Positions 48,405-63,805 of a stretch of DNA of 64,000 nt are shown here, piece after piece (within the stretch, counting starts at the first letter, position 1; every line of letters starts with the position of its first letter). This DNA comes from Kudoa neothunni (taxonomy: Eukaryota; Animalia; Cnidaria). The position numbers and the translations under genes are program-made. The DNA lies in NCBI GenBank assembly GCA_964304625.1, contig OZ199839.1, forward strand, positions 9,066,528-9,130,527. The letters run 5' to 3'. The notes beneath the pieces were generated by a model. The model was not told where the DNA came from and did not search any database. It worked only from the letters and a program-made list of their open reading frames with translations.

Positions 48405-49211
48405 TTTAAAAATAACAAAATCTCTCAATGGGAGAAAATATGGATTTTGGTCTACCAACGGAAGAGTGCATTGTATTGATAAGAACAAAAAAATAGGACT
48501 TTTGATATGCTTTTATTAATAAAGCTAATGAATTCCTCATGATGCCTCAAACTCAGCATGTGTATTTATTAGTTGGTTGTTGATTCAATAAAAAGTTTTT
48601 ACATTTCGCATAATACAGTCTTTGCGAATCTTCAAATTTTAAATCGTGTTCCATTACAAATTACTTCAAATATTAAACTAAATAAGTATGCTAGTTGGTC
48701 AAAATATAGTCGAATTTTTTTGTTTAATTTCGCAAGCACAAAGTTACATGTCGTGCCGTGCCGTACGTAATGGTTTTGATTTCCCTTTGGATACGCCCGA
48801 CCCATAAGTCACTGTATCTCTCTCTCAGCAACGAATCATGATTAAATATTAAACTATTAACTACACAAAAGTAACAAAGATAAAGATAAAAAAGCGAATC
48901 CATAATCAATATTTAGTCATAAATATAAGATTTTGGATGGCCGGATTAAAATCGATTGTTATTGTACAACCCCAATTTTATTAGGGGATTAAGTGGGTAC
49001 ATCAATTTAAAGACAAGACAAAATTAACCAATAAATTATTTTTTAAAAGAGCCAAATCAACCACATAAACCAAATATGATTAATTAGTTCGAAGCTCAAC
49101 GACGATATGTTATCTTCGTGAGAAATATGAAATATCGTGCGCAAACTCTGTACAATATATTAGCCGACGTAAGACGAAAGTGGATCGCAATTGATCGTGC
49201 ATTTTGTTGTG

Positions 49212-50915
49212 ATGGCTGCTAGTGGTTTCTCGTCAAATGTTGATATGTCTCTCGACGAAATTGTGTCGAAAAACAAGAACGCGATGAGATCAAAAGGAAG
49301 ACGCGGTAGAGGAGGAAGACTTGGCGGAGCTCGAGGTCAATGGAATCAAAATAACCGTCGTGTCAGAATGGTGAACAATTCTCGAAGATCTTTTGGGGTT
49401 GGCAAGCGTGGCAAACGTCAGGTTAGTTACTTAGGTTGTACATTTCGTTGTATATTTATTTCGCTTTCAACAGCTACCCGATATATGGGATAAAGGATCA
49501 TTGTTGGAACGAGGCAATTCGGCTCTATCGAACTCCACCAAAGATGTTGTTATTTCAAGCAATCGACTGATGGTTACAAATCTTAACTTCAGTGTTACTG
49601 ATGATGATATCAAAGTGATGAATAATACATACTAATTGAAGATTTTCTTCGATCATCATAGCCAATTCATTTACACTGTATCTAATGTAATAGGAGTTGT
49701 TTTCCACATGTGGTCAACTGAAAAAAGCTGTTATCAACTACGACAATACGGGCCATTCGAATGGAACAGCCGAAGTTGTTTATTTTGACAGAGCATCGGC
49801 CCAAAAAGCGTACAATAGTTTCAATGGAGTGTGTCTAGACAGTATGTTGAGTGTGCTGATGACTATTTGGTTGATTGTATTTTATTCAGAGCGTCCATTA
49901 AAAATCCAATATCTTGATGCTCCTGATGCAGCTAAGACCACTGTTTCAAGGTGATTGATTACGCTTTTTAAGCTATTAAAACACATAGTCGTCGACTGTG
50001 GGATATGTGTTTGTGGGCGATTGACGTTGGAATCCTTTTACATTATATCAGACATTAATTCTTTGCGTGGTTGTTGATACTGATGAAATGAATATATCAC
50101 AAATCTACGCCAACTGTTTGGCACAATTGTTTAACATCTGTTCATTCTATCTCGGAAATTCGATGACAATTGCCCGCCCAATGTCGTTTATGTGTGGTGG
50201 TGGTGGTAGTGGTGGTGGTGCGTAAACAATCAGATTTTCATAGACAGATAATTTAACAGTTTAATTTGATGGCTGATTGCTGTGTGTGTCGCGACGGATG
50301 GATCACCTGAAATTATTTCCATATCGAGATTATTGTCGTGATAGTTGTCGTGATAGTTGTCGTGATAGTTATCGTGATAGTTATCGTGATAGTGGTATCA
50401 ACTACTAGTGCTATCGACGTTTGATGAACAAAACCTTTGATGGACCTTTTTGGTGCCTAGACCATTTTAATACAGCCTTACTCGCGCAAATCATCGATTA
50501 CGTTATTTGTCGATCCTGTGTTACATTTCCCTGCCTTAACGATCAAGTTTAATCGTTTTCTACTGTGTTCAGTTTGCAAACTCAGTGGATCCAACTACGT
50601 TGCGATTAACATCCTCAACTATTTTGTTTTATCGACAGATTAATATTTTCCAATTAGATTGACTTTACCACCAACATCTCGCCTGTCCAGAGGATTTTCC
50701 TCAGGTGGCGGTAGGGGCATCAGATCGACCGGTAGGGGAATCGGCCGTGGCTCACGCCGTGGTAGAGGAAGATCTTCTGCAGGTCGGAAAACCGCAAAGT
50801 CGTCTGCTGCGCTTGATCAAGAAATGATTGACTATCAGAACGTATTTCTATTATATTTATCTGATGGGATGTCATTCTAAATGGTTATTTGTAGAATGAA
50901 GTTGAAATGAAGTAA
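49212..50915 (+). CDS. ALYREF: ALY/REF mRNA export adaptor (THOC4), 6 exons
   Basis: N-box VDMSLDEIV, RGG region, LPDIWD, RRM (LMVTNLNFSVTDDDIKELF...INYDNTGHSNGTAEVVY), C-box SAALDQEMIDY. Confidence 0.93.
50333..50392. repeat. 12-bp tandem repeat x5 (ttRtcgtgatag) in the long ALYREF intron
   Basis: Direct reading. Confidence 0.9.
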
Positions 50916-57906: not shown

Positions 57907-60900
57907 CTACGAAAAAAGAATGTAGATTCCATAACTTTGTTGATGTCAAACTCATCTATTATATAAGAAAAGCACTATAATATAATCGTTGATACTAGAA
58001 CAAATGTACCTTTAAAGGGGATGGTTGTGATGTAGTTTGGAAGGCTAAAATCAAAATGTATTAGTAAAAACAAAATAGAATATAATATATACTCATCAAT
58101 TTCAGAGTTTTTCAAAACGGATTTTAAAAACACCTCAAATATATCCGAGGTATGCAGTCTGACAAATTGTTTTCTAATAATCTATAAAAATGACGATTAT
58201 AAAAACAACAAATTCAGCGGCATTTTATGTACATGGTTGAGAGTGTCAACATCGGCAGGATGGGTCCAAAAAGAATCATGCACCGACGCGAAAGCAATAC
58301 CATGTCTTTGACAATCAATACAGGACAACATCATATGAGCAGCATCAAGACTATGGATGAAATTAGGACTCATAGCTGCACGATGTTTTCGAGAATCTTG
58401 AGTTGGTACAGGATAGAGATCCTAAATCAATAGAATCAGTAAATAATTTGGAAAATATATGAGATATGCTAGAGACAAATTATCGTACATATTTTCCCAC
58501 AGTTTTGTTAACGTAGTATTGGTTGACCACAAAATTGAGGGGAGTATCCCAGGTGACAGGTCGGCCAGCGGATGCGATTTCATAGCCGATAGTTGACAAC
58601 CATTCCTACCAGCCAACATTGTAGTTAGTATTGATAACAAATAGCTACCATAATTTTGACAGCGGAACCAAACAATGTTTCCAGTGCGATAAATATTTCC
58701 TTGCTGATGTATACCGAGCACATTTTAATTTCATCCGAATTGAGAATATGCTTGGCATTTAACTTTTTTTCTACCTGCGCAATAGCGCCCATAAAAGTTA
58801 CACCGTACACAAATGTCATCACAGTAGTTTAGTTTTCACCACATCTCTATCGATTGCTTGCCCATTTTGAAGAAGTTTTGCCATTTTTGGCACGCTCTTG
58901 ACACGTTCTCTTACCAACTTGGCCACATCAGCATAGACGTCGTTGGGTCGATCATTAGGCTCCAAATTCACCGACCTAATCACCCAATATTATTTATAAC
59001 CACAGAAAAACCATCAGCAATCTTTATTCACCTTGCACCATGGGGATTTCTACCAAGAGCAGCAAAATGTTGAAGACCATTGCATGAACCATCCTGATGG
59101 ATAGGGAATCCGCTTTCGTAGTCTGGATCATCTATAGCGGCTTTGATTTCATAACAGGTGGCCAGAGCTTGCCACTTCTTTTTCGCATTATGCCACCAAG
59201 TATTATTGATTGGATCGGTAGCAGATGCGACAATGTTTCTGATGTTGTTGTCCACAAATTGGATTCGTTCAGCTAGGGTCGAGTCTTTGTTGGTGCCGAG
59301 TTGATTGAACAGATGTAACTTGAGCCAGAATAGACCGCGCTCCCCAACTCGTTTCTTCTTAGCAAATACTAACATCGAACGTATGATGTCCGATCCATAG
59401 TGGTTGAGAAAAACAGAATCGGGATAGGCTCGACCTCGGAAATCCAACAAATGAGGTATATAGAAAGTTCTTCCACGATAATACTCACAAATTGAGATGA
59501 TCTTAAAAAAATTCAACCAATCATTGTATTCTTTAAATTTTTCCTGTCGATAATTGAGAGCTCGTTTGAGACTTTCACTGAATGTGGAAACTCTGTGGAT
59601 TGAGCCACTTCCCCCAGAGTGCTGAAACGCTTGTTTTAATGAAATAGGTGCACACTCCGAAATGATATCCATATGATTATAATCCTTGTTGTTTTCAATG
59701 TGTTTGATAACCACATCTAAATGGTTGAGATTGATAGTCCACGCGAGTGATCCTAATGCAGTGACGGTATCCAAAGCAGGAGCCATACTATGGCTGAGAC
59801 ATCGTTGACTGTGCTCAAGACGTATCATTGGTTGAAGTGTGTTGAGAACCAACCCCTTACGTAGATGCACCGAATTCCCCAGTGTAAAATCTATGTACGG
59901 TACAACTGGGGCCAGTCGAGGCAGCCTATCGGTTGCCAACTCCAACTTAGAAAAGTACACATTTTCGTACAATTTTTCCAGTTGTTTATTGGCCGAAAAC
60001 ACAATAACCTGAGTCTGCTCTTCAGTGGCTCTCATCACAGGATTGAAAGCCAAGTTCCCTTGGTGATCACGGAAATTATTTAGTATAAACCTTACTATGT
60101 GGTCAGTTGTCTACAACAAAACAGAAGGTAAAAACCAATGAACATCAATACATGTGGATAGTGTTTTCCAAAGATTACATTATAAAAATTCGAACATTAA
60201 CTGTATTAACTATTTACTTCAAAGACAAAAGCCAGTAAGATTTATGGCCTAAGATTTGACTGTATAATGAATTTTAAGTGTACAATTTAAATCTATATTT
60301 CAAATAAAAGGATTACATAATTTTAGAATAGATTTATCACTTAAGTTTTAGAATTTTTGTGCTCAGAGTCATTGGGGTTCAAAAGCGCAAAATTAATTTT
60401 GATATAGCATAAATTTCTATATCAACTTAATATATGCGTAAAGATTAGGGTTTCTACGTGTGTCACGCATCACGTTCACCCTTTTTGGAAACTATGAAAG
60501 GTGGGGTATTAGATTTGGGCTAATAGACGACCGCGCTATATATAGAAAATGGAAGTTTTTACGAAAAATAAGACAAATAAAATCCCCTCTTCATCTTTAA
60601 ACGCGCTGTGAACTTAATTATTTAAATTAAAATCAAGAAAATTATGGAGTAATTATGTTAATTATTGGGTTTAACAGTATATGGAACTAAGGGTTTTTAG
60701 TTGAAACTCTAAAGACCGCAGTTTTCTCATTTTCTCCTGAATCGATTAGTTTTTGATGTAACGAATATCAAGTTGAGCATTTTAATTATTCCGTATGTCG
60801 CGCCACATCACACTCACTCTTGCAATCACGCACAACGCTTATATCATGAGGTACATGCCTTTTCCAACAAGCATCAAGCATCCCTTTTTTTAGAATCTTT

Positions 60901-63805
60901 AGTAAAGATTTTTTAGGATAATACAAAAAATTGAAATTTTTCTACTTTGAATAAAAATGGTCTAAATTATAAAATATAATTTATTAAATTGTATTATCGT
61001 AAAATAGATCAATACACATTCCTTTAAAGTTAAAAAATTCATTCATAATTTTATTCCAATTAAACTCAAGAATATAAATTATAACAACGAGGGTTTTTTA
61101 CTTGAAATGATCATAAATAATTCTATAATATGAATATTATGTGATTTCCTTACCGATTTGTATATCATACAATACAAAAGCGAGTATAACATCGACTAAT
61201 TTTTTTGATAAATTTTAATTTTGTATTTATCTACAAATGAACAACTAAGCCGTATTATTATTATTCTGTTACTTAGGAAAAATTATTAATTATACACCCG
61301 GAACCTATTTTTTCCTATTAAATGCTAACATTATTCAAAAACTTGAAATTATCAGTTATTAAAGGTTTCAATCGGTTAAGGTGAACTTTAAGATAGTATA
61401 ATCTGCCAAAAATTAAATTAATCCAATTATTGTAATATTTCTTTTATAATTTATTCATTATTACAAACTTCAACTGAATACTTTGTTTTCTCACTTAATA
61501 AATTTAAATTTCGATAGGTTAGGTTAAGTGGCATTACAAAACACCAAACGTTATTTAACTTTACTGGTTAATTATGTCTTAAATTGCGAGTTAATAATCT
61601 TGAAAATTAAATAGCGAGATTAAGAATTTTAAAGGTAAACAGGCAATTACATTACCCTAATAACAATCCTTAATTTATTAATTTATTTAAATAATTCATG
61701 ATAATTATTTAACAATAATCATAAATTACAATTTCACATATAAATTAATTTATTATACTAGCTAAAATCAACCCCCCAATGTAAATAAAAATATATTTTA
61801 AAGTAATTAATCCCTAAGACAATTATAAATTAATTTGAAATTTTATCATTCCGGAATAATGTAGAGCTTTAATTATTAATTAAATTCAATTGTAGGCGTA
61901 TTCTACATAAATACTTTACTTAATAGAAGAGATTAAATGATGTTAAAGCAATAGTGTTTAACAAAAATTGTGGTATCGTGTGGATTTTGGACTATAAATT
62001 ACAATAACAACGGATAATCTTTAGGAAACACACGATGTGTGCGAATGAACATACAGACAATTTGATTTCGTTAGTGGAAATAACCAAAGGCAAACACGGC
62101 AACACCCCATACCATTTAAGAGCAATGGACAGCCATTGTTCTCTCGGTAGAAGTTGGGAGTTGCCAGCTTCGGTGTTCATCATCAGTTGATAATACTCTT
62201 TGGTGACATCGGACGCAAATTTTGTGCAACCAAATTTAACAGAAAACTTTTCACGGAATATTCGCGCAAACATGTGTCCAATACGAAAAATCAAAGTGCT
62301 CACCGACACACCGTATGTAGAAAGCAAACCATCGTACAGAATATTGCTGATAATCATAGAAGCTAGACGGTCGCATTCACTTTTGCAGAAAAACAAGCTG
62401 AAACCATCTGCTTTAGGTTCGTTTTCAGCTTGAGGTAGCGCTAAACTATCTGCAGCAGGTGTTTTCATTCCTACAGTTGTTTAAATAACACCCAAAGAAA
62501 ATGCGTAAAAATAACTTGAAGCATGGATATCCTGAAGACAAGTTGATAACAGAGATTTCCATCGTTTGGTTAGATTGTCAAATTTGGCAACCTCATCTGA
62601 GCTGGGTTTGGTTTTCTTTAGATAATCAGGAATCGGTATAGAAGTGAATCGTTCGTAAGTGGATCGACTGTCATTTTCTGAGTGTTGAAACTCTTCTTCA
62701 CTAAAGTCTACACTTTCATACGGTAGCTTGTTCGAATACAACGCACATTTCAACTCTCGAATCAAATCAGGATCGTACAGTTGTTTGGCCAGCAATGACA
62801 AATTTTCGATTTTTGTCAATCTCGAATCGATATGCTCTTCTAGCGAGAGATTGTGATCATCTAACAACTGTTTGAACGCCTCCAAATGAACAGGAAGCAT
62901 ACTATCCCAATATTTGTAATTTTTCAACAAATGCTACAAATTCATTGGTTACAGTTAGTTAAATACTTGAACCCATGTGTCACATAAAAGAGACAAATCA
63001 TTTACTTTCGCTAAATCTTCAGGATGAAAATTCTCGTGGTAGAATACAGGTAATGGTTGGTTTCGTTTGATGAGCATTTGATAGGAGATCAGGTTGGCCA
63101 TATGCAACAAATCATCACCATAAGGATAGTTGGTGGCGATAACTTTTGATCCTACGTCGATAGAGAAATCAGCAAGTTTCGATTCGACTATCAACGCCAA
63201 AATAACAGCCGGAGATAGAGAGAACATGCGACGGGTTTTAACGCAAGTTTTCATGGCGTTCTCCAAATCGCCACGAATCAAATGAGCAAATATGACAATT
63301 TCGTTTTTGTTGGTGTGCATTCTTGCCCAGCTGTAGAGTTTTGAGAAACTTTTCGAGTATTTCAACTGATGTTTTGATGAGGTTGTTCTCTCTAGAAAAA
63401 TTATCGAAGAGAAATCGAATAAAAGCAAGAAGAATAACGCGACTCCAAATAAATTACTTTGAGATTTTGATGTTGCTTGTAATTTGTTGTTGATATTATC
63501 AACTGGAGTCTCATTTACGGAAAGCTCATCCTCATTGTTAACAAATGAAAATATATGAGTATCTATTGAGGATCTGTTGACGGTATTTGTTGAGATAACA
63601 CTTTCTTTACATTCTCTTCTATAGGAAATATTAATGGAGTTTATTGAATGAATAAAGGTATATTAATAGATCACTTAGCAACGATAAAACCGTTATTACG
63701 AAAAGGTCTTTTACTCGCCAACAAACCACCTAAATATCGTCTATTTGAGTGGTTGCATTGATTCACCCTCTTTGTCCAACGTAAGGCAATGCATAATTTG
63801 AACAT
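57907..63805 (-). CDS. POLRMT: Mitochondrial T7-like RNA polymerase, multi-exon, with one frameshift in motif B as assembled (possible pseudogene)
   Basis: Presequence MFKLCIALRWTKR...RRYLGGLLASKRPFR; DFRGRAYP, GLFWLKLH, PIHQDGSCNGLQH (motif A), VMTFVYGVT (motif B), PNFIHSLDAAHMM, SVHDSFWTH (motif C), STFFFS*. Confidence 0.95.

What the first reader, a model, noticed from the sequence alone, without database searches (positions are those of the whole stretch)
58810..58850. POLRMT has a 5-nt tandem duplication in catalytic motif B while the rest of the gene is intact
Seen: the minus strand reads gat aga gat gtg gtg aaa act AAACT act gtg atg (plus strand agttt agttt, 58826-58835). In frame this gives DRDVVKTKLL then TGA TGA. 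Removing one aaact restores RDVVKTTVMTFVYG, the RxxxKxxVMTxxYG O-helix. No AG is positioned to splice around it, and the downstream frame has TAA immediately upstream. Known: truncation here removes motif C, so the enzyme would be dead; POLRMT is essential wherever mtDNA is transcribed; the myxozoan Henneguya salminicola has lost its mtDNA. Inference: either very recent pseudogenisation linked to mitochondrial genome loss, or a heterozygous null allele or assembly error. The lack of other lesions argues for a recent event or an artefact.
Basis: partly seen in the sequence, partly recalled or inferred. Interest (0 to 1): 0.8.

Follow-up and report, generated by a model that had tools for sequence, protein, structure and literature searches.

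The report
POLRMT frameshift is an assembly error
The five extra bases that seem to break the mitochondrial RNA polymerase gene of this fish parasite (very probably the myxozoan Kudoa neothunni) are absent from the sequence data of two runs found to hold this locus, and its mitochondrial genome is still there, so the gene is almost certainly intact; the real surprise is that the genome carries three further, conserved copies of this normally single-copy gene.

Summary
The 5-nt duplication (58826-58835) and the resulting stops are in the assembly. The pseudogene/mtDNA-loss reading fails. The assembly holds an 18.2-kb mitochondrial contig with open cox1, cox2 and cob, and nuclear POLG and TFAM-like genes. 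Contigs from two runs of one sample lack the five bases; the bridging one is 516 nt long with no other difference. A second indel (homopolymer, 57912-57917) removes the gene's canonical C-terminus and is likewise absent from those data. About 5.2 kb of listed contigs show no substitutions. This pattern fits an unpolished, ~7x HiFi assembly (matches K. neothunni, PMC12239612). With the read-supported alleles the gene encodes a 1,133-aa POLRMT, and a ~98%-identical relative splices its transcript. A heterozygous null cannot be fully excluded (~12%), because contigs drop rarer alleles. By-product: three more phage-type RNA polymerase genes exist in this genome. They share intron positions with POLRMT and each has an ortholog in a second organism; one keeps all catalytic motifs, two have a degenerate motif B. 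This scan noted those three loci singly before, on other DNA. I found no paper describing such a family in an animal.

The parts
57907..63805 (-). POLRMT gene, 12 exons, 11 GT-AG introns (33-67 nt, plus one of 1,974 nt); 1,133 aa with the alleles seen in the run contigs
   Evidence: best PDB match human POLRMT, E 1e-46
58826..58835 (-). 5-nt tandem duplication in the assembly, in motif B; one copy absent from contigs of runs X2 and X3
58816..58821 (-). two TGA codons reached in the shifted frame (as assembled)
58802..58848 (-). motif B / O-helix (Arg, Lys, Tyr-Gly at canonical spacing once the single-copy allele is read)
   Evidence: downstream half aligns to yeast Rpo41 927-980
59091..59093 (-). 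motif A catalytic Asp codon
58272..58280 (-). motif C His-Asp-Ser
57912..57917 (-). homopolymer one base short in the assembly; second indel, alters the C-terminus; run X2 contig has the extra base
58182..58232 (-). 51-nt intron, skipped in a spliced contig of run X5 (related organism); position shared with all three paralogs
58422..58488 (-). 67-nt intron, skipped in the same spliced contig
58976..59031 (-). 56-nt phase-2 intron after motif A; position shared with the C2:5061k and C1:7051k paralogs
58606..58648 (-). 43-nt phase-0 intron; position shared with the three paralogs by inspection
60111..62084 (-). 1,974-nt intron holding a multi-copy repeat (about 60460-61060)

Best explanation
The organism has an intact, ordinary nuclear POLRMT gene that transcribes its 18-kb mtDNA. 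The five extra bases are a consensus error. The parasite genome was assembled from about 7x HiFi reads taken from a fish library, with no polishing step mentioned, and here the contig probably rests on one or two uncorrected reads that carried a short slippage insertion and a nearby homopolymer deletion. Shown: the duplication is absent from run contigs, mtDNA and its machinery are present, the frame is open with the read alleles. Inferred: the single-read origin, the species name, and enzyme activity.
For: Run X2 contig 10 (516 nt, depth 11.6) spans 58434-58954, lacks the 5 nt and has no other difference; it is the only X2 contig on the site. Run X3 contig 19 also lacks them. X2 contig 9 corrects a second, homopolymer indel that restores the canonical C-terminus. 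Listed X2 contigs 9-16 (about 5.2 kb) show 0 substitutions and 2 indel events, the usual long-read error pattern rather than a second haplotype. Run X1 holds 0.99, not 1.00, of 210 sampled words; 2.8-4.0 would be missing if it lacks the assembly-only alleles (weak). The mtDNA contig has open cox1, cox2 and cob. POLG exonuclease domain E 3.9e-83, with polymerase motifs downstream. A related organism (run X5, 18 differences over the roughly 770 nt laid) yields a spliced contig of this gene.
Against: Only contigs were laid, not raw reads, and contigs drop the rarer allele of a bubble. The X3 contig has only 18 nt on one side of the site, below the 31-nt bridging rule. Library types are not on record. 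All X runs of organism A that hold the gene come from one sample. A 5-nt duplication is a less typical HiFi error than a homopolymer slip. The published QV of 48.5 implies only about one error per 70 kb on average.
Confidence: 0.85

Rival explanations
1. The duplication is a real heterozygous (or minor-genotype) null allele, made by polymerase slippage. The assembly kept that haplotype after purging, and the parasite lives on the intact allele.
For: The fish stage is thought to be diploid and the assembly was purged of haplotypic duplicates. Tandem duplication next to an existing 3-nt repeat is a natural mutation type. Contig assembly can hide the second allele (caveat).
Against: No contig with the duplication bridges the site in X2 or X3. 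No substitution separates the assembly from the listed X2 contigs over about 5.2 kb. The companion indel is a classic homopolymer error. Published diversity appears low.
Confidence: 0.12
2. Fixed, very recent pseudogenisation, either on the way to mtDNA loss or compensated by the paralog at C1:7051k that keeps motifs A, B and C.
For: A potentially active paralog exists. mtDNA loss is known in another myxozoan, Henneguya salminicola (own knowledge; paper not held).
Against: A fixed lesion cannot coexist with run contigs that lack it. mtDNA genes are open. POLG and a TFAM-like gene are kept. A close relative splices the transcript. Another Kudoa species respires aerobically (PMC4492933).
Confidence: 0.02
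3. The genomic sequence is right and the frame is mended by alternative splicing, ribosomal frameshifting or RNA editing.
For: Unchecked first-reader notes list other frame breaks in this genome.
Against: Every frame-restoring intron deletes the motif B Lys, Tyr and Gly. The difference already appears in unspliced contigs that run through introns, so it is at the DNA level.
Confidence: 0.01

Closest known systems
Animal/fungal POLRMT (human POLRMT, yeast Rpo41; T7-like single-subunit RNA polymerase, PF00940)
   Same: Motifs A, B and C, C-terminal aromatic-Ser end, about 1,130 aa, basic N-terminus; best solved-structure match is human POLRMT.
   Different: Fast-evolving sequence. This genome has four family members instead of the single gene usual in animals (own knowledge).
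Henneguya salminicola mtDNA loss with decayed mitochondrial replication genes (from memory; paper not held)
   Same: Same class of parasites (Myxozoa).
   Different: Here mtDNA, POLG and a TFAM-like gene are present, and the lesion is not in the run contigs.
Plant RpoT multiplication (RpoTm/RpoTp/RpoTmp; three genes in Physcomitrella patens, PMC3895441)
   Same: Several nuclear phage-type RNA polymerase genes derived by duplication.
   Different: Plants share them between two organelles and the copies look catalytically normal. Kudoa has one organellar genome, a reduced gene set, three very divergent copies, and two of them have a degenerate motif B in both organisms seen.
Indel consensus errors of low-coverage long-read assemblies
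   Same: Indel-only differences, one in a homopolymer, in an essential gene, absent from other sequence data.
   Different: One of the two is a 5-nt tandem duplication, which is less usual than a 1-nt slip.

Membership tests
POLRMT (T7-like RNAP) | PF00940 catalytic domain, collinear | tested here: met
   exon-wise hits to profile 1-111, 112-161, 162-219, 291-345
POLRMT (T7-like RNAP) | Motif A Asp and motif C His-Asp | tested here: met
   59091-59093 and 58272-58280
POLRMT (T7-like RNAP) | Motif B Arg-x3-Lys-x7-Tyr-Gly in one frame | tested here: met
   met with the allele in run contigs; broken only in the assembly
POLRMT (T7-like RNAP) | Conserved C-terminal end | tested here: met
   canonical end with the X2 allele at the homopolymer
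POLRMT (T7-like RNAP) | Mitochondrial import and transcription activity | not testable with these tools
   basic, Arg-rich N-terminus seen by eye; no predictor or assay
Unitary pseudogene | Disabling lesion fixed in the organism's DNA | tested here: not met
   X2 and X3 contigs lack it
Unitary pseudogene | Further decay or loss of expression | tested here: inconclusive
   the only other lesion is also absent from X2; no RNA of this sample; a close relative gives a spliced contig
mtDNA-less animal (Henneguya type) | No mitochondrial genome | tested here: not met
   18,219-bp contig C4 with open cox1, cox2, cob
mtDNA-less animal (Henneguya type) | Loss or decay of POLG/TFAM/TWNK | tested here: not met
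   POLG and TFAM-like gene present; Twinkle not detected with three Pfam models, inconclusive
Heterozygous null allele | Both alleles in raw reads | not testable with these tools
   runs that hold the locus are kept as contigs only
POLRMT paralog family (three other loci) | Origin by duplication of the nuclear gene (shared intron positions) | tested here: met
   by inspection of three-frame prints; tree puts all seven rows on one side of a weakly supported branch (45)
POLRMT paralog family (three other loci) | Conserved orthologs in a second organism | tested here: met
   P0121 39%, P0124 51%, P0183 68% identity, all from run SRR31175926; ortholog pairs at 100/100/95 support
POLRMT paralog family (three other loci) | Expression, localisation, activity | not tested

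The most novel reading that the evidence does not exclude
Leaving the artefact aside, Kudoa keeps a four-member family of phage-type RNA polymerases. These are the canonical POLRMT (this window); a divergent copy with all catalytic motifs (C1:7051-7060k), probably a second active enzyme such as a primer-making or promoter-specialised polymerase; and two copies conserved in a second organism with a degenerate O-helix (C1:5208k, C2:5061k), probably polymerase-dead or altered proteins with nucleic-acid-binding or scaffold roles. That four genes exist and that three have orthologs elsewhere is shown. That they are expressed and have divided functions is inferred.
Probability: 0.6. Interest if true: 0.65.

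Novelty: not a real feature. Interest (0 to 1): 0.3.

Why it matters
The finding as posed would have meant a second animal losing mitochondrial transcription. It does not hold, and it warns that frame breaks in this low-coverage assembly need read support. The by-product matters more. Animals are generally taken to have one POLRMT, and a 2013 paper called a moss the only organism known with three mitochondrial RNA polymerases (PMC3895441). Four genes, three strongly diverged yet conserved, in one of the most reduced animal genomes would be unexpected. It gives testable links to the extremely divergent Kudoa mtDNA. It also means that other notes on 'POLRMT with a rewritten active site' in this genome concern paralogs, not the main enzyme.

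Tried and rejected
Splice rescue: 12 frame-restoring GT/GC..AG choices, all delete most of motif B. A recent near-identical second copy or unpurged haplotig: DNA search finds only the window itself. mtDNA loss: rejected. POLG loss: PF00476 gave no hit, but PF18136 and inspection found the gene, so the blank was a sensitivity problem. Twinkle: no hit with PF13481, PF03796, PF13155; not interpretable. A myxozoan ortholog of the window gene was not found by protein search (best identities 30-53%; length limits apply). Phage/plasmid origin of the paralogs: disfavoured by shared intron positions; the tree is quick-mode, 167 columns, prone to long-branch attraction and its other rows are unnamed. 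Rfam on the mtDNA gave nothing above gathering scores. Literature searches for myxozoan POLRMT paralogs found nothing. Left out: any search with a joined, spliced model (searches were exon by exon, by reference).

Full report
Observation. The + strand carries two adjacent copies of a 5-mer at 58826-58835. On the - strand this falls just after the Arg and Lys of motif B of a T7-like RNA polymerase. Pfam PF00940 matches the exon pieces at profile positions 1-111, 112-161, 162-219 and 291-345; the second and third are in different frames with no gap between them. A local translation of the 12-exon model stops at residue 919 as assembled. All 12 possible frame-restoring introns remove the motif B Lys, Tyr and Gly. 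The best solved-structure match of the large exon is human POLRMT (E 1e-46), and the piece after the break aligns to yeast Rpo41 927-980.

Organism. The assembly has 40.26 Mb in four contigs. Contig C4 is 18,219 bp and carries cox1 (E 7.8e-71) and open frames for cox2, cob and nad-like genes with TGA read as Trp. Size, three chromosomes plus a mitochondrial contig and about 30% GC match the Kudoa neothunni assembly of PMC12239612. That assembly is 40.2 Mb, built with hifiasm-meta from tuna HiFi reads at k-mer coverage about 7, purged of haplotigs, QV 48.5; the word 'polish' does not occur in the paper, and diversity appears low. The species name is an inference from these matches, not a marker test. 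mtDNA loss is excluded. POLG is present, with an open exonuclease exon and polymerase motifs. A TFAM-like HMG gene lies 18 kb upstream of the window, and two RrnaAD loci exist. Twinkle was not detected, which shows little, since POLG was also missed by its general family model.

Reads. Four runs of one sample hold the locus. Laying three of them and a run of a second organism gave the decisive result. In X2 the only contig on the site (516 nt, depth 11.6, 58434-58954) lacks the five bases and has no other difference. In X3 a 248-nt contig also lacks them, but it has only 18 nt on one side. X2 also has one more A in the run at 57912-57917. With both read alleles the gene encodes 1,133 aa and ends in the canonical way; with only the first it ends in a 7-aa longer, non-canonical tail. 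So the assembly has two indels 0.9 kb apart in this gene, while the listed X2 contigs (about 5.2 kb) show no substitution. Indels without substitutions, one of them in a homopolymer, are what a thinly covered long-read consensus gives; a second haplotype would be expected to differ mostly by substitutions (established knowledge; inference). X1 holds 0.99 of the sampled words, in line with 2.8-4.0 of 210 missing if it lacks the assembly-only alleles, but its contigs over the exons were not returned, so this is weak. Run X5, a different organism about 98% identical, yields a contig that skips two predicted introns, so a close relative transcribes and splices the gene; it does not cover the site itself. 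A heterozygous null keeps about 12%.

Mechanism. Most likely (0.85) an ordinary POLRMT is imported into mitochondria and transcribes the 18-kb genome; the break arose in consensus building. Shown: absence of the lesion from run contigs, open frame with those alleles, presence of mtDNA and its machinery. Inferred: single-read origin of the error, import, activity.

By-product: four genes. PF00940 hits four loci: the window, C1:5208k, C2:5061k and C1:7051-7060k. No near-identical DNA copy of the window gene exists. By inspection of three-frame prints, all four have a phase-0 intron just after motif C and another before the same Trp-containing helix, and three share the phase-2 intron after motif A. 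This points to duplication of the nuclear gene, not capture from a phage or plasmid. Each of the three has an ortholog in one other run, SRR31175926, an unnamed organism with 19-22% GC and short introns: P0121 (39%), P0124 (51%), P0183 (68%). A quick tree on the single-exon motif A region recovers the three ortholog pairs (100, 100, 95), groups them (92, long branches) and places all seven rows on one side of a weak branch (45). The C1:7051k pair keeps motif A Asp, motif B Arg/Lys/Tyr-Gly and motif C His-Asp in both organisms. The C1:5208k pair lacks the motif B Tyr-Gly in both, and its motif C Asp is Glu here but Asp in the ortholog. The C2:5061k pair lacks motif B Arg and Tyr in both and keeps motifs A and C. 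My reading: one probable second active enzyme and two impaired or altered ones. A transcription-independent role is known for human POLRMT (PMC3575816, abstract). The N-terminal halves of the paralogs were not checked for lesions, and their expression was not tested.

Comparison and novelty. The window gene is a member of the POLRMT family on every feature testable here, and it fails the tests for a pseudogene and for a Henneguya-type loss. The frameshift is not a real feature of the organism with about 85% confidence. The paralog set works like the plant RpoT multiplication (PMC3895441) but differs in having one organellar genome and degenerate members; I found no description of it in myxozoans (the library misses most subscription papers). 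This scan's first readers noted each of the three paralogs singly, and other frame breaks in this assembly; these are leads, not support.

Steps left out. All database searches were made exon by exon, by reference; no search used a joined model. Exons were joined once, locally, only to check the frame of the window gene.

Verdict. Observation confirmed in the assembly; interpretation as gene death not supported; assembly error 0.85. Interest of the frameshift alone is about 0.1; overall 0.3 because of the conserved paralog family (probability 0.6 of being a functional, divided family; interest 0.65 if so).

Noticed in passing
G000:C1:7046000-7061000 (L013, L014), + strand: Divergent POLRMT paralog with motifs A, B and C all kept, spread over large introns (about 1.2 and 6.4 kb; the larger holds transposase-like remains); ortholog on L023.
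   Followed up: partly
L012:4200-7500, - strand (G000:C1:5208k): POLRMT paralog lacking the motif B Tyr-Gly, motif C Asp replaced by Glu; ortholog P0121 (L017) keeps the Asp.
   Followed up: partly
L015:3800-7500, - strand (G000:C2:5061k): POLRMT paralog lacking motif B Arg and Tyr, motifs A and C kept; ortholog P0124 (L021) has the same pattern and lacks the intron after motif A.
   Followed up: partly
   Followed up: yes
G000:C4 (L010, L011): 18.2-kb mtDNA, 44% GC, very divergent genes packed mainly in the first 9 kb and last 1 kb, with a long repeat-rich stretch between that has no recognisable genes.
   Followed up: no
whole genome: No Twinkle helicase found with PF13481, PF03796 or PF13155; may be divergence or intron splitting.
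   Followed up: partly
L025:1797-2468, - strand (G000:C2:9148.3-9149.0k): TFAM-like HMG-box gene about 18 kb upstream of the window's POLRMT.
   Followed up: partly
window:60460-61060: Multi-copy repeat inside the 1,974-nt POLRMT intron; many diverged contigs lie on it (summed depth up to about 58).
   Followed up: no
window:56256-57245 (+): hAT-type transposase-like ORF just downstream of POLRMT (weak DUF659 match, below cut-off).
   Followed up: no
window:44209-46797 (-): 862-aa uninterrupted ORF with no Pfam match, unusual in this intron-rich genome.
   Followed up: no
window:41074-41580 (+) and 49191-50880 (+): Exons that look like ribosomal protein L7 and an ALYREF/THOC4-like RRM gene (by eye, from memory).
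   Followed up: no
L023:3200-3245: The intron after motif A in the second organism's ortholog appears to use a GC donor.
   Followed up: no
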